Assembly: GCA_907165135.1 (NCBI GenBank) | Contig: OU015568.1 | Coordinates: forward strand, 2,852,001 to 2,916,000 | DNA length: 64,000 nt | Source: Oikopleura dioica | Taxonomy: Eukaryota; Animalia; Chordata | Direction: 5' to 3' | Part shown: in pieces, positions 21,618-53,914 of the stretch | Layout of the letters: the number at the start of each line of letters is the position of its first letter | Numbering within the stretch: position 1 is the stretch's first letter | Made by a program: the position numbers and the translations under genes | Notes under the pieces: model-generated | Databases searched by the model: none | What the model saw: only the letters and a program-made list of their open reading frames with translations | What the model was told of the DNA's origin: nothing

Positions 21618-24600
21618 ATGAAGCTTGGAGGTAAGCTACATATTTAACGTCATTTTCTTTCATCTATATTATCAAGCTGCTCTTTTGGGCCGGTCTCTCG
21701 CAGCCGAGACATGTTCTGCTCGCTGTGACGGTGGGGAGACCTCTGAAAACGCGCTTTGCAATGCTGAGCCTTGTTCGGTCTACACTGACGGATCAAATGT
21801 ATTTGGCGATGGAGGCACTTTTGACTCCCTAGAGAGCTGGATTTGCTCAGCCGGATGTTCAATGGAACTTGTTCAGCCCGGGTATTACTCTGACAACGCT
21901 GTTTTTGTCTCTGGAAGGGGCGTTCAGGGTTCCGCAGTATCTATGGATATTGATGGTGATTTGCTGTCAAATCAGGTTCTATTAAATTGCTCAAGTACTT
22001 TTTCAACTGTAAATTAAGGACTATAAAGGCCGTGTTTTCTTCAAGCCTGCTGCTGGCAACGAAGCTGGTACTGTCAAAATGATGGTTCGAAATCAAAAGA
22101 AAGTCGACAGCTCAAATCGATGGAGTCAACTTTCAAGTACTATTGATGTCCCTGCTGGAACTGAAGACTCAAGTTGGATTCCTGTGGATTTTAATTGGAA
22201 CCCACGGGACTCTGTCAGCGGATCGCCTCAGAACTTCATCTATCGGCTCTATCTCCTGTATGTCGGAGAAAACGGCCAGTTTGGGGACTACTACCAGGAT
22301 GAGTCCTTCATTGTTCCAGCTGCTGATCTGGTTTCATTTACATCTCTGATTACTGATGGCGACTTTGAAGCAGGAACGAGTATGTGGTACGCACCAACTG
22401 GCTCAGAAGTAACTTACATGAGAGAAGACAACGGCAACACTTATCTTCTACATCATGGCAGAACCGGAAGCTGGCAAGGACCGATTCACGATCTTGAAAT
22501 CACGCCGGAACTGTTATCTCAAGATATTGAAGCGACATGGCGGGTCAAATCGACTACTTCTGAGCAAGTTAGTCTCACTGGTAAAATCGACGTCACCCTC
22601 TCCGATGGCACCACTGTCAATCTTCTTATGCCGGGTTGTTCCGTTCCTGGAGGCGATTGGATGAAAGCAAGTGGAATGGTCAACATCGGGAAAAATGTAG
22701 AAGATACTTCTCAGGTAACGAAAGTAAGCTTCAAGCTTAGTGGTCCAGCAGCAGGAGTTGACATTTCTCTCGACGATGTGGACATCCATTTCTACTCTGA
22801 TGATAAGTCCTGGGAGACAGCCGCCGACAAGAGAATTAATGCTTATCGAAAATCAAATGTTCTCATGAATGTTAATGTTCCAAACGCGAGCAAGGTTAAA
22901 GTAAAGATGACAAAGAACGCCTTCATGTTCGGTGGGATGTGCGACAAAGACATGCCAAATGTCCTCGACGACTTTGAGAACGATTTCTTTGAGCTTTTCA
23001 ATGGTGGTGTGATGCGAAACGAAATGAAATGGTATCACAATGAGCGATTAATGGATGTGTACAACTATGTCGACGCAGATTACATGATCGACCTCTTCGA
23101 ACAGAAAAATGCGACGCTTCGGGGCCACGCAGTCTTTTGGTCCGTCGACAAACACGTCCAGCAATGGGTTCAAGACATTACCGACATGGCACTTCTTGAA
23201 GAACGAATGATGATGCGAACTGAAGACGTCATCGGCAGATATGCAGGACGAATCCCTAACTGGGACATTTTCAACGAAGTTGCTCACGGCGACTATTTCA
23301 GGCGAAATTTACCAGGTGGAGACGCAATCTGGAGTAAAGTCATGGACCGCATGCTCGAAATTGATCCCAATGTTGACCTCGTCTTCAATGATTACCAACT
23401 CAACACGGGTGATTTCAGTGAGTGTTTTCTTGATGTCACCTCTTCTATCCATCATTATCTCAGTCATTATGGGGTCCAGTCGCACACCAAGAATCCTCGA
23501 CCCCTTGCTATTGATCAGCGAATGAATGTGATGGCTGGAAAGAATCTAGAAAATCGTCTGCTGATCACTGAATTTGACAACGAAGAAGTCGATGTCGATC
23601 GAAGAGCAGAAGAACTCGGTGATTTTATGAAAATGACCTATTCTCATCCGAATGTCGACGCCATCATTGTTTGGAGCTGGCTTCGAGAAATTCAGAAACC
23701 AGATTGGCATCGCGCCATGTTTGAGTCAAACGTAGAAGGAATAGAGACTCAAAACCCGATAATCCCAAAACCTGATGTTTGCGATAAATTCAACGTACTC
23801 TGTAACTATCCGCTAAACCCAAACGCCGCGGGTTACAGATGGCTCGAACTCGTCAAGAACGAATGGAATACAACTTCTGGCCATGCGAATACCCCTGAGC
23901 TGACACCAGCGCTTCTCGCTGATGAAGGTGTCAGTCTCTTCAGAGGAACTTATGATGTCACTGTTTATGACGCATCAGACAACCTTCTCCACACACAGAC
24001 AATTCACGTGACTGATCACGATGCTTGCAAATCGCTTACAAGAATCAACTTTGAAAGTCTGGCGGAGATCGAAGCACTTGCACCGTCTCTCGTCATGATG
24101 GGAACGACCACCACTCCTGTAATTGAAGAAATGGCCGGATGGGTGAAGAATGCTGTCAGAATCACTGGTCGAACAGCACCGTGGAATAACATGGCTCTTG
24201 ATGCGTCACTTTTGCCTACTGGAGCTGAGATCTTCTTCGGCGGCGCTTTTCGAATCGTTGAACCTCTTGATGCTCCTGTATCCGCTTTCATTACTGTCAA
24301 ACGGATGAAAGATGATGGAAGCTGGGCTTACTCCCAAATCGATCGAATAGAAATCCCAGCTGAAGAAGTCAACGACTGGCACACAATCGGAGGAGCCCAC
24401 ACCATCCAAAACGGCGACGATAAAATTTACCTCGTTGTCAAGGACTACATCGGTGATCTCCTCGCAGATAGCTGGTATGCCGACAATCTTGCCGACTACA
24501 AAGCTTGCAACGAGAACACTTTCACCATCGAAGATACTGGATCGCCGCCAGATCCATGCGCCGATGTTACCTGCGGCGAAAACGAAAGTTGCGTCGATGG

Positions 24601-27600
24601 AACTTGTGAGTGCAGCAATGGCTTTATTTTTGATGAATCAACGCAGACATGCGTCGCCGATTCAACGTATTCCTTCACTTCTTCTTTCGGAACAACGTTC
24701 AAAGGAGAAGTAACTGACGCTGGAACCGTCCACTTCAAGGGTATTCGATACGCCGAGTCTCCAACTGGCGATCGTCGATGGAAAGGCCCACTTGCCACGA
24801 CGACTTATCCGACTGAATACGACGCTACTCAGTACGCGCCAAAATGCATGACTCGCGGCTGGAATGCAAACAGCCCCACTGCTGATGAGACAAGTGAAGA
24901 TTGCTTGTTCGTCAATGTAATGACAAAATCAGAATATATCGAAAGCGGCGAGAAAAAGCCCATTATGGCGTACATTCACGGTGGCGCTTATAATTTCGGA
25001 GATGGTCGAGTCGAGTATAACAATCTTGTCCTTGATCAGGGAGTCATCTACGTCTCGATCCAGTACCGACTCGGCCCATATGGATTCCTTTACCATGAAG
25101 GTGCGGATACACCCTACAATGGAAACTGGGGATTACTCGATCAAAATGTCGCGCTTCAGTGGATTCAACAATTTGCTGGCGAGTTCGGAGGTGATGTCAA
25201 TCAAGTAACTTTGAACGGCTGCTCTGCTGGTAGTGCTTTGACCTGGTGGCACTTGACCGTGCCAGAATCCTGGCCACTCTTCCATCGGGCGATAACAAAC
25301 GGTATCGGCGCATATGCCAGTTTTGGAAACAACTCCGACATTGAGATCAGCAAGGGCTACGTCGACTACACCATGGATCAAGTCGGCTGCAGCAATATCG
25401 CGTGCCTTAGATTAAAGACTCCATCCGAGCTCAACACGCATTTTACTGACGCCATCAAGCAAGTTTACAATCCAACGAAAATGTACTTGTCGCCAGGTTT
25501 TGCTCCTGTTGTTGACGGACTCATCAAAACGAAATCAACCCTTGAGTCGCTTCTTGCAGGAGAGATTAGGCCTAATACTCCTATTTCTTGGAATTACGCT
25601 CGGGATGATGCCTGGGGAATGGTCGATGGCGCATTCAATGATGCTACTGATGTAACTTCTAGATATGAGTTCATTCTGACATAACTTTTTTCTAGAGACT
25701 CGACGTTTTTGCTGGACGAGAAGACGAAATCTCCGCTGCTCAATCTGCATCCGGGTTCCATGTTCCTTCTGATTATTCCGATCAGATCCTCCGAGCCATC
25801 TATGGAGACGCTCATTTCACCAACCATCTCCAAAGCACTTTTGGCTGTTCTGATGTTGACGGTGTCGCTCAAGATTGCCAAGACGCACTAAGCAGATTCG
25901 GTGTTGCTCACACTTGGACTTGCAACACTCAATACGGCTTTACTGGCGAGGCTCTTACCAATCCCGATATCGGACCAATATACCCCATGGAATTGAGCTA
26001 CAAAACTTGCGAAAATAACGATCAAAATGAGAAAACGCGAACTTGCCACTGCGCTGATAACCAAATGATCATGGGCAATCAAATCATCGGTCCTTGGCTT
26101 CCAGAAGACGAGCAGTTTTTCAAACTCGGCATGCGCAACTACTGGGGTGAGTTTATCAGGACAGGTACTTTCCCAACAGGGGATTTCGGAACGATGAAAC
26201 CAATCACCGAGTTGAATGGCGATCTGAACTTGATCGACATCACCGGAATTCGACAAGAACCAGCCTATGCCGAAGAATGCGCCGCTTTGAACGCTCTTGC
26301 TGACGAGATCGGCTACCTTGAGCTTTACAACAATGGATATTTTCACGTGGATGAGCCTGAGAACCCAAACGAATTCTCTTTCACAACTTCTGACGGAACA
26401 ACTACGTTCACTGGAGAAAAAACAGCTTTCGACAACATCCATTTTAAAGGGATCAAATTCGCAGAAGCTGAACGATGGGCGCCTCCAGTCATGAAGACCA
26501 GCTACCCAGCTTCTGTTGACGCAACAACCTACGGTGCTGCCTGCATGAATGCTAACTGGACTCCAAATACCGCGAGCCCACCTGAGTACTCAGAAGATTG
26601 CCTCTTCATCAACGCACACACCAAGGCCGAATACATCCAAAACGGAGAAAAGAAGCCAATTTTGATCTTTGTGCATGGCGGTGGTCTACAGGGCGGAAAC
26701 GGCTACGAAGAATTCGATGCGCTGATCTCCAACGAAGAAGTTGTCATGTTCTCTATTCAGTACCGAGTTGGCCCGTATGGATTCATGTACAATCACGATT
26801 CAGTAGAAGAACACAAGGGCAACTGGGGATTCCTCGATCAGCAGATGGCGCTCGCTTGGGTTCAACAATGGGGAGGTGAGTTCGGAGGTGATGTTGATCA
26901 AGTGACAATAGCTGGCTGCTCCGCGGGCGGTCAATCTATTTGGTGGCATCTCACCATGCCCAGTTCCTGGCCATACTACCATCGAGCAATTACAACTGGA
27001 ATCGGTGTCGGCGGCACCTGGAACACTACTGCTAATTTGGAAGTGAATAGAATGTACAACGAGTACGTTGCGTTGCAAATGGAATGTGAAGACATCGATT
27101 GCCTTCGAACAAAAACACCAGAGGAACTCAATCCTCTCTTCAAAGCTGCTCCAAGCATGTTCTTGTTGGACGGAATCTTCCACGACGCTCAGTATGGTCC
27201 GCAAGTGGACGGAGTTTTGAAGAGCAAGACGAATCTCGAATCGCTCTACGCTGGAGAAATCAGGCCCAACACGCCGATTTCCTGGAATTACAACAGGGAT
27301 GATGTTTGGAACCTCCTCGACGGTGAATTTGCTAAAATGGTCACAGTAAGTCAAATGAATATCTCCAATGGTAAAAACTTTCAATTTTTAGCGTCTTGAT
27401 GAGCTAAAAGACAAGCTGGACGATCTTGAGGCACTTCAGATTTCTTCTGGCTTTGAAGTCCCATCAGATTATACCGATCAAATGCTCCGAGCTTCCTATG
27501 GCGATGAATTCTTCGCCACTTACATTGAGCCTGTTTTCAGCTGCCCTAATAGAGAGAATGGTGAAGTCGTAGACTGCAAGCCAGCGATGAATCAATTCCA

Positions 27601-28130
27601 AAACGCTCAAAAATGGAGCTGCAACACGCAATTTGCTCTTTCGGGCGCGCCAATGACCGATCCTAACATCGGTAAAAACGGATATTGTAAAATACGCTTC
27701 AATGAATTCAGGGCCTATCTATCCATTGGAGCTTACTCACGAAAACTGCGTCTCTGACACTCGAGTCTGTCACTGCCACGACAAATTTATCCTCTTTGGA
27801 AAAGCGGCGATCTACCCTGGACTTGGGGATAAAGAGATTGATTTCCGAACCGCTAGTCGTGAATACTGGGGCGAATTTATCAGAACAGGGACCTTCCCGA
27901 ATGGACATTTGGGCGAAATGAAAACGATCTCAGAATTGAATGGGTAAATTTATGAAAGAGAATTTTTTTTCCTTAGTACAATAATTCTAGTAAGTTGAAT
28001 TTGCTCGACGAAGACGGAATCGTCCATGACTATGCGTACGAGCAAGAATGTGCAGCTCTGAATGCTCTTGGAGACGAAATTGGACATCTTCGAATGTACC
28101 AGAACGGATACTACCACAAATATGACCAAG
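21618..28130 (+). CDS. Secreted multidomain enzyme: Cys module, CBM4/9-like x2, GH10 endo-xylanase, CBM-like, EGF, type-B carboxylesterase x2 (~2000 aa; last exon uncertain)
   Basis: Signal MKLG|AALLGRSLA; GH10 motifs NEMKW, RGH, WDIFNE (23261-23278), VQSH, ITE (23564-23572); EGF CADVTCGENESCVDGTCEC; two esterase modules with EDCLF.N, HGG, YR.GP.GF, NWG.LDQ, GCSAG; in-phase GT-AG introns 21976-22018, 25652-25695, 27346-27390, 27672-27711, 27944-27990. Confidence 0.9.
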
Positions 28131-28304
28131 GTAAGTTAAAATTAACGAATTATATGAACAGCGATTCATATGAATTCGAAAATAACAGAACAAATATATT
28201 TTCTAATGAAGCTTTTCCATCTTTACTGCTGAATAAAACTCTATTTTCGCACAAAAGATGCTTCGAAATGTCAACTTTTTTCATCTCAAAAGGTCATGCT
28301 TTCA

Positions 28305-28739
28305 TTAATCATTTGCATATTTATTTCTTATCGAAATCGCATTCTCGAGCAGGTCATTACATGTTTTTTCAGTTAAAGAATTCAACGAAATCCTAATATC
28401 TTCCATTTTTTCGTCGATCTTCGCAATATTAGAAGAAATCTCGACAGGGACTTGCATTTTCTGTACGTTTAAAATTACCATCGTCGCCGTCAGAATCCCC
28501 TGAATCAAAGATTTTCATCAAGTTCAAAGCAAAAGGGCTTGTACCTTTGCTTCGCCGAGCGTTTTCGTCAGTTTTGCGGCAGTTTCAAAACCAGAATTGA
28601 ACCCTTTCTGCATCTCTTCCTCCGCATTCAATTCCATTCCAAGTTTGAAGCTTTCTGTTTTGATTTGATTTTCATGCTTTTTCGTTGTCAGACGCATCAC
28701 TTCATCGTCGTTTGCTTCTTCGTCCCAAATATCGTCCAT
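28305..28739 (-). CDS. YAE1: YAE1-like maturation factor
   Basis: Acidic N-terminus MDDIWDEE.., then KTESFKLGMELNAEEEMQKGFNSGF..GEAK|GILTA matches the Yae1_N G..LQ.GF..G pattern. Confidence 0.65.
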
Positions 28740-52750: not shown

Positions 52751-53914
52751 ATGTCCAGAGCATTTTCGAAACTTTTATTCTATTTCGGAATTTTTCTGAG
52801 TTTTGGGATCATTTCCACGATTCTGAGTGTTCCAAAATTCCTCAAAAAAACAAGCCTTCAATATAAAACGACCAAAGATGAAACGACAACAACAACGATT
52901 TCGACACCAACAACAGGTTTTCTATTTCAAAATCTCCGAGGATTTTCAATTATTTTAGAGCCACCAACATCAGAAACCACGCTAGAGTTCTTCACTTCAT
53001 CATCCCCTTTTTCGACATCACAAAAGGCAAAAGAGACAAGCTCTACTTCCAAAACACTAGATTTGACTGAAACAACAACTCCAGCTTCAAACACCATAAT
53101 TTTGACAGCGACAACACCAACAACAACGGAGACAACAACAGAGATAGGAACAACGACGCTTACCGAACCAATAACAACACCATCATTTGAAATCACGACA
53201 GAATCTCGATGTGCCAGCTTCGATTGCCTAAATGGAGGAGTATGTGTTCTTGAGTACGGATATCCAAAGTGCGAATGTAAGGAGCCCTATTTCGCAAATC
53301 ACTGCGAGCGGCACCCATGTGACTTTCACGATTGTAACAATGGCATCTGCATATACGACGATAAAAATAAAATTCCAAGATGCGTCTGCGAGCCGAATTA
53401 CGCTGGTGAGTTCTGCGAACAAACTCTGTGCGAGATTCAAGGATGCGAAAACGGAAGCACTTGTTTAATTGAAAACGGAGTTGCTAGATGTAAATGCCTT
53501 GTCTCGTATTCAGGCGAAAAATGTCAGTGCCCTCCGATCTTTGAAAAGCAGCGAGAGCATGGAAGCTTTGTTTATAGACAGTGGCACGGGGCAAAAGCTC
53601 ATTGCGAAAATAAAGGAGGTTACCTTTCATTTTTTCTCAACCACAAAGAATTTGCCGATTATATTCTCAAATATCGAGGGCAGAAACATGATGAATGGAT
53701 TGGATACGAGCAAAAGTATCCAAACAACAAATACTTGTACAAAACCGTTGATGGAAATGATGCGGAATACTACAATTGGGCGGAAGGCGAACCGAGTGAG
53801 GATTGGGAGTACTGCGTTCAACTTTTTGACAACCGAGATACGATGAATGACAAAGAATGTAGTGCAGAGTGGTGGGCTTTTTCCTGTCGCTTTTCTCAAA
53901 ACTGCGTGAAATAA
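52751..53914 (+). CDS. Type II anchor, Thr-rich stalk, 3xEGF, C-type lectin protein; copy 1
   Basis: N-terminal hydrophobic anchor; Thr-rich stalk; three EGF Cys patterns; CTLD W..A..HC..KGG.L, WIG, WAEGEPS..CV..MNDKEC..FSC; probable 42-nt in-frame intron in stalk. Confidence 0.9.
   Translation: MSRAFSKLLFYFGIFLSFGIISTILSVPKFLKKTSLQYKTTKDETTTTTISTPTTGFLFQNLRGFSIILEPPTSETTLEFFTSSSPFSTSQKAKETSSTSKTLDLTETTTPASNTIILTATTPTTTETTTEIGTTTLTEPITTPSFEITTESRCASFDCLNGGVCVLEYGYPKCECKEPYFANHCERHPCDFHDCNNGICIYDDKNKIPRCVCEPNYAGEFCEQTLCEIQGCENGSTCLIENGVARCKCLVSYSGEKCQCPPIFEKQREHGSFVYRQWHGAKAHCENKGGYLSFFLNHKEFADYILKYRGQKHDEWIGYEQKYPNNKYLYKTVDGNDAEYYNWAEGEPSEDWEYCVQLFDNRDTMNDKECSAEWWAFSCRFSQNCVK

What the first reader, a model, noticed from the sequence alone, without database searches (positions are those of the whole stretch)
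21618..28130. Single-chain animal hemicellulase: CBMs, intact GH10 xylanase, EGF and two intact carboxylesterases
Both GH10 catalytic Glu motifs (WDIFNE, ITE) and the substrate residues (NEMKW, RGH, QSH) are present. Each esterase module has an HGG oxyanion loop, a GCSAG nucleophile elbow, Asp where most family members have Glu (RDD, as in carboxyl ester lipase), and a His motif (CHCAD/CHCHD). CBM-GH10 proteins are known from plants and some invertebrates, but I know of no GH10 fused to tandem type-B esterases. Microbial xylanase-esterase fusions use other esterase families. Inference: one secreted enzyme that de-esterifies and cleaves xylan-like polymers, either digesting algal walls or remodelling the cellulosic house. 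This is the best candidate for a new system in the window.
Basis: partly seen in the sequence, partly recalled or inferred. Interest (0 to 1): 0.9.

Follow-up and report, generated by a model that had tools for sequence, protein, structure and literature searches.

The report
Animal xylanase fused to two esterases
A tunicate (Oikopleura-type) gene encodes one 2,096-residue secreted protein joining sugar-binding modules, an apparently active xylan-cutting enzyme and two apparently active carboxylesterases; I found this arrangement only in this species complex, and no paper in the searched library describes it.

Summary
Window 21618-28232 (+) is one 8-exon gene with GT-AG introns of 40-58 nt. 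It encodes 2,096 aa: signal peptide, two CBM22-like modules, GH10 with a C-terminal beta-sandwich, a third CBM_4_9-like module, an EGF module and two tandem type-B carboxylesterase domains.

Both GH10 catalytic Glu and all subfamily-invariant residues are present. Both esterases keep HGG, Ser, Asp and His at the canonical alignment columns.

Uninterrupted ORFs cross both domain borders. A 75%-nucleotide-identical ortholog keeps the same reading frame, with dN far below a saturated dS in every module.

The Oikopleura dioica reference carries the ortholog (83% identical) annotated as two genes, CBY12110 and CBY12109. They are split at an unrecognised 128-nt GA-AG intron that this window lacks, so the window shows they are one gene.

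No other GH10 + COesterase fusion appeared among 150 GH10 relatives, 97 esterase relatives, 80 metagenome loci or the ESM Atlas clusters. No paper found describes it.

The esterases form an appendicularian-specific clade, and their substrate is unknown. Gut versus house expression is untested, and the RNA reads laid were uninformative.

The most likely role is a digestive multi-enzyme for algal cell walls, convergent with clostridial GH10-CE1 enzymes. I class it as a new variant of a known kind, of moderate interest.

The parts
21618..28232 (+). Whole CDS, 8 exons (21618-21630, 21677-21975, 22019-25651, 25696-27345, 27392-27671, 27712-27943, 27991-28130, 28189-28232), 2,096 aa
   Evidence: The junctions of introns 2, 4 and 5 are confirmed by orthologs that lack those introns. 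The last intron's donor and acceptor are conserved in L004.
21618..21705 (+). Short signal peptide (aa 1-14, interrupted by intron 1 at 21631-21676)
   Evidence: Inferred from the sequence. Paralogs P0004, P0285 and P0002 share the same MKL + hydrophobic + small-x-small N-terminus. No signal-peptide predictor was run.
21706..22321 (+). N1: Cys-rich cap plus CBM22-like beta-sandwich (aa 15-205; contains intron 2 at 21976-22018)
   Evidence: No Pfam hit. hhalign of the N1 family against the CBM family gives 95% probability, E 3e-8. It is a beta-sandwich in the AF2 model of paralog P0004.
22322..22822 (+). CBM22 module (aa 206-372)
   Evidence: Pfam CBM_4_9, 31.5 bits. The family profile hits CBM22 structures 4xup (E 1e-31) and 1dyo (E 1.5e-15). 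AF2 pLDDT is about 90.
22829..23776 (+). GH10 catalytic domain (aa 375-690); acid/base E524 at 23276-23278, nucleophile E622 at 23570-23572
   Evidence: Pfam 86.1 bits. PDB 7d88 at E 5e-33, with both Glu aligned to the residues mutated in 7d89 (E182A/E280A). Foldseek TM is 0.88 by target. All 22 near-invariant subfamily residues are present.
23777..24076 (+). C-terminal beta-sandwich extension of this GH10 subfamily (aa 691-790)
   Evidence: It is shared with GH10 relatives and fragments. The AF2 model shows strands.
24077..24511 (+). Third CBM_4_9-like module (aa 791-935)
   Evidence: Weak Pfam CBM_4_9 match (E 0.026). The homologous regions of P0285 and P0080 match CBM_4_9 clearly. AF2 gives a beta-sandwich at pLDDT 70-83.
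24524..24661 (+). EGF-like module (aa 940-985)
   Evidence: Six-Cys pattern; sub-threshold EGF family hits; four short strands in the AF2 model; corresponds to the inter-esterase EGF_3 module of paralog P0002.
24671..26355 (+). Carboxylesterase domain 1 (aa 989-1535; intron 3 at 25652-25695); HGG at 24977, Ser 25223-25225, Asp 25607-25609, His 26047-26049
   Evidence: Pfam COesterase 217.5 bits. Triad columns. 90% identical to the ortholog, with dN/dS about 0.02.
26356..28129 (+). Carboxylesterase domain 2 (aa 1536-2082; introns 4-6); HGG at 26674, Ser 26920-26922, Asp 27301-27303, His 27771-27773
   Evidence: Pfam COesterase 207.8 bits. Triad columns for Ser and Asp; the His is read from the family alignment and motif position. 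77-79% identical to ortholog P0172, with pN 0.13 against pS 0.78.
28189..28237 (+). Last exon (14-aa tail plus TGA) and overlapping AATAAA poly(A) signal
   Evidence: The same donor and acceptor context and the first three residues (EQI) are conserved in L004.

Best explanation
This is one gene in a genome of the Oikopleura dioica complex. It encodes a secreted, modular, three-catalytic-domain enzyme.

Shown:
- Domain order is signal peptide, CBM22-like N1, CBM22, GH10 with its C-terminal beta-sandwich, a CBM_4_9-like module, EGF, carboxylesterase 1 and carboxylesterase 2.
- All catalytic residues are intact.
- Every module is under purifying selection.
- The reading frame is continuous across all domain borders.

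Inferred mechanism:
- The CBMs dock the protein on hemicellulose-containing particles, most plausibly ingested algal or plant cell-wall material in the gut lumen.
- GH10 cleaves beta-1,4-linked (or mixed-linkage) xylan by the family's retaining double-displacement mechanism, with E524 as acid/base and E622 as nucleophile.
- The two Ser-Asp-His esterases, held next to the glycanase, hydrolyse ester groups on the same particle. The targets could be acetyl-type substituents on the polysaccharide or other wall- or membrane-associated esters.

Functionally this parallels bacterial CBM22-GH10-CBM22-esterase enzymes such as Clostridium thermocellum Xyn10B. It was built independently, from an animal-type carboxylesterase clade.
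For: Gene model and frame:
- Orthologs in independent assemblies keep the frame and confirm the splice junctions (L001, L004, L085).
- The reference's two-gene annotation is explained by a 128-nt GA-AG intron. The downstream 'gene' starts mid-domain, without its oxyanion loop.
- DNA runs from several samples hold 24300-27300.

Selection:
- pN is 0.05-0.17 against pS about 0.75 in all modules.

GH10 and CBMs:
- GH10 identity, fold and catalytic pair are supported.
- CBM22 identity is supported.

Esterases:
- The triad and oxyanion loop are conserved in both domains and in all paralogs and orthologs.
- The AF2 model of paralog P0004 has a full carboxylesterase fold (pLDDT >90; TM 0.76-0.80 to CES1/BChE).
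- O. dioica paralogs P0004/P0003 pair the same CBM22-like N1 module directly with an esterase. So this esterase clade is repeatedly tethered to carbohydrate-binding modules.

Context from the literature:
- Animal GH10s with CBMs are digestive enzymes in algae-feeding molluscs, expressed in the hepatopancreas (PMC7560691).
Against: - No transcript evidence spans the gene. The RNA runs laid gave 14 or fewer partly matching reads, which stem from the divergent reference-type ortholog.
- There is no biochemical or expression-site information.
- The esterase clade has no characterised member. Its nearest named relatives are generic carboxylesterases and cholinesterases at 20-33% identity, so a carbohydrate-ester substrate is only an inference from the domain context.
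- Ligand specificity of the CBMs is unknown.
- EGF modules are typical of extracellular-matrix proteins, which leaves a house role open.
- The fold and triad geometry were modelled on a paralog, not on the window's own esterase domains.
Confidence: 0.55

Rival explanations
1. Same single-chain protein, but the esterases are digestive lipid or sterol-ester hydrolases (carboxyl-ester-lipase-like), not carbohydrate esterases. The CBM-GH10 part opens and tethers to algal walls, while the esterases work on released lipids, pigment esters or wax esters.
For: - The fold and nearest relatives are general carboxylesterases, cholinesterases and a gut esterase.
- The catalytic acid is Asp, as in a minority of the family. 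From memory, carboxyl ester lipase also uses Asp.
- No similarity to any CAZy carbohydrate-esterase family was seen.
Against: - Paralogs couple this esterase clade directly to a CBM22-like module. That points to polysaccharide-bound substrates.
- Carboxyl ester lipase was not among the best 60 PDB sequence hits.
Confidence: 0.22
2. The protein is made by the oikoplastic epithelium and remodels the polysaccharide scaffold of the house, rather than digesting food.
For: - EGF modules, and TSP1 in another GH10 gene noted in this genome (s1-322992, unchecked), are typical of house proteins (PMC3390340).
- Tunicates use acquired glycoside hydrolases in cellulose matrix formation (PMC10334666, abstract listed).
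Against: - No glycoside hydrolase or esterase term, and no accession of these genes, appears in the house-proteome paper or its 11 supplements.
- The house scaffold is cellulose, while GH10 and CBM22 are xylan-type modules.
Confidence: 0.15
3. It is not one chain. As in the O. dioica reference annotation, the GH10-esterase-1 part and esterase 2 are separate genes or separate mRNAs (internal trans-splicing or polyadenylation).
For: - The reference annotation lists CBY12110 and CBY12109 as two genes.
- Trans-spliced operons are known in Oikopleura (from memory).
- No bridging RNA read was obtained.
Against: - In the window, exon 4 (25696-27345) is one open frame from the middle of esterase 1 to two thirds of esterase 2, with no stop.
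- In the reference, the first 26 residues of esterase 2 are attached to esterase 1. CBY12109 starts at an internal Met and lacks the HGG loop. Removing the 128-nt GA-AG stretch restores the frame exactly.
Confidence: 0.05
4. The esterase domains are non-catalytic, cholinesterase-like adhesion or binding modules (as in neuroligins or thyroglobulin).
For: Neuroligin-4 is the best single PDB sequence hit for part of esterase 1 (E 1e-24).
Against: Ser, Asp, His and the HGG oxyanion loop are all present in both domains. They are conserved in every ortholog and paralog at saturated synonymous divergence.
Confidence: 0.03

Closest known systems
Oikopleura dioica reference proteins CBY12110.1 (E4XQM4, 1,576 aa, 'GH10 domain-containing protein') and CBY12109.1 (E4XQM3, 425 aa, 'Carboxylic ester hydrolase'), scaffold FN653106.1
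   Same: This is the ortholog. It is 83% identical over aa 1-1566, with the same domain order and all catalytic motifs.
   Different: It is annotated as two genes, because a 128-nt GA-AG intron inside the esterase 2 N-terminus was read through to a stop. The window has no intron there and shows the joined reading directly. The entry is uncharacterised, and its accessions occur in no paper searched.
Bacterial bifunctional xylanase-esterases: Clostridium thermocellum Xyn10B/XynY (CBM22-GH10-CBM22-dockerin-CE1; PDB 2w5f, 1dyo) and rumen XylR (GH10 + CE1, PMC8128909)
   Same: One chain carries CBM22 modules flanking a GH10 xylanase, followed by esterase catalytic domain(s). The window's GH10 and CBM match these structures.
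   Different: The esterase family differs: CE1 (GLSMG elbow) against type-B carboxylesterase PF00135. There are two esterases instead of one, and an EGF in place of the dockerin. It is an animal gene with spliceosomal introns. The full XynY domain order is from memory.
Eukaryotic CBM22-GH10 xylanases: amphioxus XP_078686187/XP_019626949 (P0007), plant and charophyte GH10s, molluscan CBM_4_9-GH10 clusters
   Same: CBM_4_9 modules precede the GH10. They share the same GH10 subfamily motifs and the C-terminal extension. Amphioxus is the best full-length hit (37% identity, E 2e-43).
   Different: None of the 150 best GH10 relatives carries an esterase domain.
O. dioica paralogs CBY11545 (P0285), CBY35795 (P0004) and CBY07427 (P0002)
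   Same: P0285 is N1-CBM-GH10-CBM, colinear with aa 1-934 at 36% identity. P0004 is N1 plus an esterase and is sister to esterase 2. P0002 is esterase-EGF-esterase.
   Different: Each carries only a subset of the modules. Only the window gene and its ortholog combine GH10 with the esterases.
Animal carboxylesterases and cholinesterases (CES1, CES2, BChE, AChE)
   Same: Same alpha/beta-hydrolase fold (TM 0.76-0.80 by target), Ser-acid-His triad and HGG oxyanion loop.
   Different: Only 20-33% identical. The acid is Asp rather than Glu. Cys sits next to the catalytic Ser (GCSAG) and on both sides of the His (CHC). The domains are tandem and fused to CBM and GH modules.

Membership tests
Glycoside hydrolase family 10 | Significant match to the family profile | tested here: met
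   PF00331 scores 86.1 bits against a cutoff of 22.1. There are 104 PDB GH10 chains at E<=1e-3, the best being 7d88 at 5e-33.
Glycoside hydrolase family 10 | (beta/alpha)8 barrel fold | tested here: met
   The AF2 model of window aa 206-990 has pLDDT above 90 over the barrel. Foldseek TM is 0.88-0.89 by target to 7d88/7d89.
Glycoside hydrolase family 10 | Two catalytic glutamates (acid/base in the WD..NE motif, nucleophile in the TE.D motif) | tested here: met
   E524 and E622 align with the residues that are Ala in the inactivated E182A/E280A mutant 7d89. They are near-invariant in a 90-sequence alignment.
Glycoside hydrolase family 10 | Endo-xylanase activity | not testable with these tools
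   This needs a recombinant enzyme assay.
CBM22 (Pfam CBM_4_9) | Profile match and beta-sandwich fold | tested here: met
   - Module 2: PF02018 scores 31.5 bits against 25.9. The family profile hits CBM22 structures 4xup (1e-31) and 1dyo (1.5e-15). AF2 gives a beta-sandwich.
- N1: matched only by hhalign (95%).
- Module 3: sub-threshold (E 0.026).
CBM22 (Pfam CBM_4_9) | Xylan binding | not testable with these tools
   Ligand specificity cannot be read from these alignments. It needs binding assays.
Type-B carboxylesterase/lipase (Pfam COesterase PF00135) | Significant match to the family profile, both domains | tested here: met
   217.5 and 207.8 bits against a cutoff of 27.
Type-B carboxylesterase/lipase (Pfam COesterase PF00135) | Ser-acid-His triad and HGG oxyanion loop at the canonical positions | tested here: met
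   In a 52-sequence alignment the Ser column is S in 47 rows, the acid column is E in 34 and D in 14 (D here), and the His column is H in all 46 filled rows. The esterase 2 His is placed from the family alignment and motif position. HGG is present in both domains.
Type-B carboxylesterase/lipase (Pfam COesterase PF00135) | Complete alpha/beta-hydrolase fold of about 500 aa | tested here: inconclusive
   The fold is met for paralog P0004, which is 61-64% identical to esterase 2 (pLDDT >90; TM 0.76-0.80 to CES1/BChE). The window's own domains are split by introns and could not be submitted as one sequence.
Carbohydrate esterases acting on xylan (acetyl-xylan or feruloyl esterases, e.g. CE1) | Membership of a recognised CE family, or demonstrated activity on esterified xylan | tested here: not met
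   The only family assigned is PF00135. Weak PF20434/PF07859 hits also occur in nearly all generic carboxylesterases. The CE1-type elbow (GLSMG) is absent. Activity is untested. So it may work like these enzymes, but it is not a member.
Cholinesterase-like adhesion molecules (non-catalytic) | Loss of the catalytic triad | tested here: not met
   The triad is intact in both domains and in all relatives.
Oikosins (house structural proteins) | Detected in the house proteome or expressed in the oikoplastic epithelium | tested here: inconclusive
   No esterase, hydrolase or xylanase term, and none of the accessions CBY12110, CBY12109 or CBY11545, occurs in PMC3390340 or its supplements. That paper may use identifiers other than the CBY accessions searched.

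The most novel reading that the evidence does not exclude
The appendicularian-specific esterase clade (GCSAG elbow, Asp acid, CHC His motif) would be a family of true carbohydrate esterases, recruited from animal type-B carboxylesterases. They would act in cis with a GH10 xylanase. That would make this an animal-encoded, convergent counterpart of clostridial xylanase-feruloyl esterase enzymes. It would also be the first polysaccharide-dedicated members of the carboxylesterase family that, from memory, CAZy dropped as CE10.
Probability: 0.3. Interest if true: 0.75.

Novelty: new variant of a known kind. Interest (0 to 1): 0.55.

Why it matters
- Multi-catalytic hemicellulases that pair a backbone-cleaving xylanase with de-esterifying domains are a hallmark of specialised bacterial plant-biomass degraders. 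Finding the same design in an animal genome, built from an animal-type carboxylesterase clade, would be a clear case of convergent enzyme architecture.
- Appendicularians process a large share of oceanic primary production, so it would also bear on how they digest phytoplankton.
- It gives CAZyme researchers a concrete candidate for carbohydrate-esterase activity in the PF00135 family.
- On the practical side, it corrects the O. dioica reference annotation: two gene models are really one, split at a non-canonical intron.

Tried and rejected
- RNA support. Three oligo-dT RNA-seq runs and one single-cell run with the same species label were laid on 22200-28190 at 90% likeness. Only 14 partly matching reads resulted. 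Their loose-end consensus matches the reference-lineage ortholog exactly (L085:10497-10526). So the runs come from a divergent lineage and say nothing about splicing here.
- RNA index. No indexed RNA run holds the stretch.
- More fusions. One metagenome scan with the CBM3-EGF-esterase junction found nothing. A second, with an esterase-family alignment, returned 80 loci, none of which also encodes a GH10. ESM Atlas look-ups showed no cluster combining PF00331 with PF00135.
- Labelled GH10 phylogeny. The third word-indexed search returned only 3 hits. The quick tree places the appendicularian GH10s with charophyte, plant and other eukaryotic sequences at SH-aLRT 90. I do not claim an origin from it.
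- Pfam on N1 gave nothing. Profile-profile comparison resolved it.
- Disulfide check. I could not test whether the Cys next to the catalytic Ser bonds with the Cys flanking the His, because model coordinates are not exposed.
- Rejected: a recent bacterial transfer of a ready-made xylanase-esterase. The esterases sit in an animal-type clade, and none of the GH10 relatives examined carries a COesterase domain.
Full report
**1. What is in the sequence**

Between 21618 and 28232 on the + strand there is one gene of 8 exons. The exons are 21618-21630, 21677-21975, 22019-25651, 25696-27345, 27392-27671, 27712-27943, 27991-28130 and 28189-28232. All seven introns are GT-AG and 40-58 nt long, and the product is 2,096 aa.

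The stop codon overlaps an AATAAA at 28232-28237. Its end (28130) is the end of exon 7, and a 14-residue tail is encoded by a last short exon.

So the domain borders are not at exon borders.

**2. Independent support for the gene model**

An 85%-identical protein (P0001) sits on a metagenome contig, L001. L001 aligns to window 21618-26159 at 75.6% nucleotide identity.
- L001 has intron 1 and intron 3 at the same places.
- It lacks intron 2 and reads exactly the junction I had inferred.

A second contig from the same sample (L004, protein P0172) carries the esterase 2 ortholog at 77% identity.
- It lacks introns 4 and 5, again reading my junctions.
- It keeps the donor and acceptor context of the last intron and the first residues of the last exon.

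Synonymous sites between the window and these orthologs are saturated (pS 0.70-0.95), while pN is 0.05-0.17 in every module, linkers included. GH10 and esterase 1 are the most conserved, at 90% amino-acid identity.

DNA runs from several samples with the same species label hold 0.39-0.73 of the sampled words of 24300-27300. The esterase 1 to esterase 2 stretch is therefore not peculiar to one assembly.

**3. The reference genome has the ortholog, split in two by annotation**

The 90% clusters of P0001 and P0172 contain two O. dioica reference proteins: CBY12110.1 (E4XQM4, 1,576 aa, 'GH10 domain-containing protein') and CBY12109.1 (E4XQM3, 425 aa, 'Carboxylic ester hydrolase'). They are adjacent and on the same strand of scaffold FN653106.1 (L085).

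The window protein aligns to L085 from aa 1 to 1566 at 83% identity, and esterase 2 follows downstream. Between ...DNVHFK and GIEFATAERW... the reference has 128 nt that begin GA and end AG.
- The annotated CBY12110 reads into this stretch and stops after seven codons.
- CBY12109 starts at an internal Met in mid-domain and lacks the HGG loop.
- Removing the 128 nt restores the frame exactly.

The window has no intron at that place. It therefore shows directly that the two reference models are one gene.

The window's genome is thus a divergent member of the O. dioica complex. That is an inference from three facts: 83-85% protein identity, saturated dS, and the same coded species label on the DNA runs that hold the window and on the RNA runs whose reads match the reference.

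**4. The modules**

- **Signal peptide (aa 1-14).** It is inferred from the sequence and from identical-style N-termini in paralogs. No predictor was run.
- **N1 (aa 15-205).** It has no Pfam hit. Its family profile matches the CBM family profile at 95% probability (E 3e-8), and it is a beta-sandwich in the model of paralog P0004.
- **Module 2 (aa 206-372).** It matches Pfam CBM_4_9 above threshold. Its family profile hits solved CBM22 modules: Paenibacillus Xyn10C 4xup at E 1e-31 and C. thermocellum Xyn10B 1dyo at E 1.5e-15.
- **GH10 (aa 375-690).** See section 5.
- **GH10 C-terminal extension (aa 691-790).** This is the conserved extension of this GH10 subfamily.
- **Module 3 (aa 791-935).** It is a weaker CBM_4_9-like module.
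- **EGF (aa 940-985).** It is a six-Cys EGF-like module.
- **Two COesterase domains (aa 989-1535 and 1536-2082).** They are 49% identical to each other and joined by a linker of only a few residues.

**5. Are the catalytic centres intact?**

GH10:
- The best solved relative is XynA 7d88 (E 5e-33; Foldseek TM 0.88 by target).
- E524 and E622 align with the two residues replaced by Ala in the inactivated double mutant 7d89.
- All 22 positions that are at least 90% conserved in a 90-sequence alignment of the subfamily are present in the window.

Esterases:
- In a 52-row alignment with generic carboxylesterases, the nucleophile column is Ser.
- The acid column is Glu in 34 rows and Asp in 14. All members of the Oikopleura clade, the window's two domains included, have Asp.
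- The His column is His in all 46 filled rows. The esterase 2 His lies in another exon and is placed from the family alignment and motif position.
- Both domains have the HGG loop.
- The same motifs are present in the reference ortholog and in all paralogs.

An AlphaFold2 model of paralog P0004 (61-64% identical to esterase 2) has pLDDT above 90 over the esterase. It superposes on CES1, CES2 and BChE at TM 0.76-0.80 by target. The window's own esterase domains are interrupted by introns and could not be submitted as one sequence, so fold and geometry are inferred from the paralog.

**6. Relatives and history**

GH10:
- The closest full-length relative outside appendicularians is an amphioxus protein with two CBM_4_9 modules and a GH10 (37% identity, E 2e-43).
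- Next come bacterial metagenomic, charophyte and plant GH10s.
- Atlas clusters show the same CBM_4_9-GH10 pairing in plants and molluscs.
- In molluscs these genes are expanded and expressed in the hepatopancreas (PMC7560691).

Esterases:
- They form a strongly supported clade (100/99). Every member with a species name is from O. dioica, and the rest come from unnamed environmental assemblies. The nearest named carboxylesterases are only 27-33% identical.
- Within the clade, esterase 1 is sister to a group of esterase 2 plus the 'N1-esterase' genes P0004/P0003. P0002 (esterase-EGF-esterase) branches outside.

O. dioica also has P0285, which is colinear with aa 1-934 of the window protein (36% identity) but has no esterase. 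The family has therefore been shuffling the same modules. Only the window gene and its ortholog combine GH10 with esterases.

**7. Is the architecture known?**

- None of the 150 best GH10 representatives carries an esterase-like domain.
- Of 97 esterase relatives, only P0001 carries PF00331.
- No metagenome locus fetched with the esterase family carries a GH10.
- The Atlas look-ups showed no such cluster.
- Literature searches found nothing on it, whether for Oikopleura plus xylanase, glycoside hydrolase or carboxylesterase, for GH10 plus carboxylesterase, or for the accession numbers.
- Characterised GH10-esterase fusions use CE1.

The closest functional analogue is C. thermocellum Xyn10B, whose CBM22 and GH10 structures are among the window's structural and profile hits. 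Its full domain order, ending in a CE1 feruloyl esterase, is from memory.

**8. Function**

The shown facts are these: a secreted-type N-terminus, three carbohydrate-binding-type modules, an intact GH10 and two intact esterases, all on one chain and all under purifying selection.

The step from there to 'hemicellulase that cleaves and de-esterifies xylan' is inference. It rests on domain context, on the repeated pairing of this esterase clade with a CBM22-like module, and on the bacterial analogues.

A lipid or pigment-ester role for the esterases, or a role in the house matrix, cannot be excluded. The house-proteome paper and its supplements contain no esterase or hydrolase term and none of the accessions. 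This is weak evidence, because that paper may use identifiers other than the CBY accessions searched.

RNA evidence was not obtainable. The reads laid came from the divergent reference-type ortholog. They show only that its esterase 1 C-terminal region is transcribed.

**9. Verdict**

The feature is a real, conserved, probably fully active multi-catalytic enzyme. I found its architecture nowhere outside the O. dioica complex, and no paper in the searched library mentions it. Its ortholog has been sitting in public databases as two uncharacterised entries.

I class it as a new variant of a known kind (bifunctional xylanase-esterases; animal CBM-GH10 digestive enzymes) and score interest at 0.55.

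Noticed in passing
L085:10789-10916 (O. dioica reference scaffold FN653106.1); the corresponding window position is about 26430, inside exon 4: A 128-nt GA...AG interruption splits the reference ortholog into two annotated genes (CBY12110 and CBY12109). The window lacks it. In contig L004 the same site is preceded by at least 251 nt of non-coding sequence, so the intron differs in length between close relatives.
   Followed up: yes
window introns 21976-22018, 27346-27391 and 27672-27711, compared with L001 and L004: Intron presence and absence differ between lineages. Window introns 2, 4 and 5 are absent from the reference-type contigs, while the reference-type intron in esterase 2 is absent from the window. 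This points to rapid intron turnover within the species complex.
   Followed up: partly
window 25220-25225, 26044-26052, 26917-26922 and 27768-27776: In the whole appendicularian esterase clade, and in the distant relative P0175, a Cys precedes the catalytic Ser (GCSAG, where most relatives have E, Q or H). Cys also flanks the catalytic His on both sides (CHC). A disulfide or redox feature at the active site is conceivable, but it could not be tested because model coordinates are not exposed.
   Followed up: partly
L002:10001-12901 (O. dioica CBY07427), L005, L003: The same modules recur in other combinations in O. dioica: esterase-EGF-esterase (P0002), N1-esterase (P0004, sister to esterase 2) and N1-CBM-GH10-CBM without an esterase (P0285). 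This suggests repeated exon or domain shuffling in this family.
   Followed up: partly
another piece of the same genome (earlier notes s1-322992 and s1-322928): Earlier first-stage notes report a giant double-GH10 gene with TSP1 and CBM modules, and a MITE inside a GH10 exon. GH10 genes therefore seem to be expanded in this genome. I did not check this.
   Followed up: no
window 53195-53710: A weak tblastn match (27.5% over 178 aa, E 2e-6) to the EGF-containing linker region of P0002. This is probably another EGF-module gene.
   Followed up: no
window 28305-28739, minus strand: A small gene on the opposite strand ends close to the 3' end of the xylanase-esterase gene, so the intergenic spacer is very short.
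   Followed up: no
protein cluster of P0007 (Branchiostoma): The 90% cluster of the amphioxus CBM-GH10 protein also holds 317-383-aa proteins named 'non-neuronal cytoplasmic intermediate filament protein-like'. This is probably a naming artefact of a shared N-terminal beta-sandwich region.
   Followed up: no
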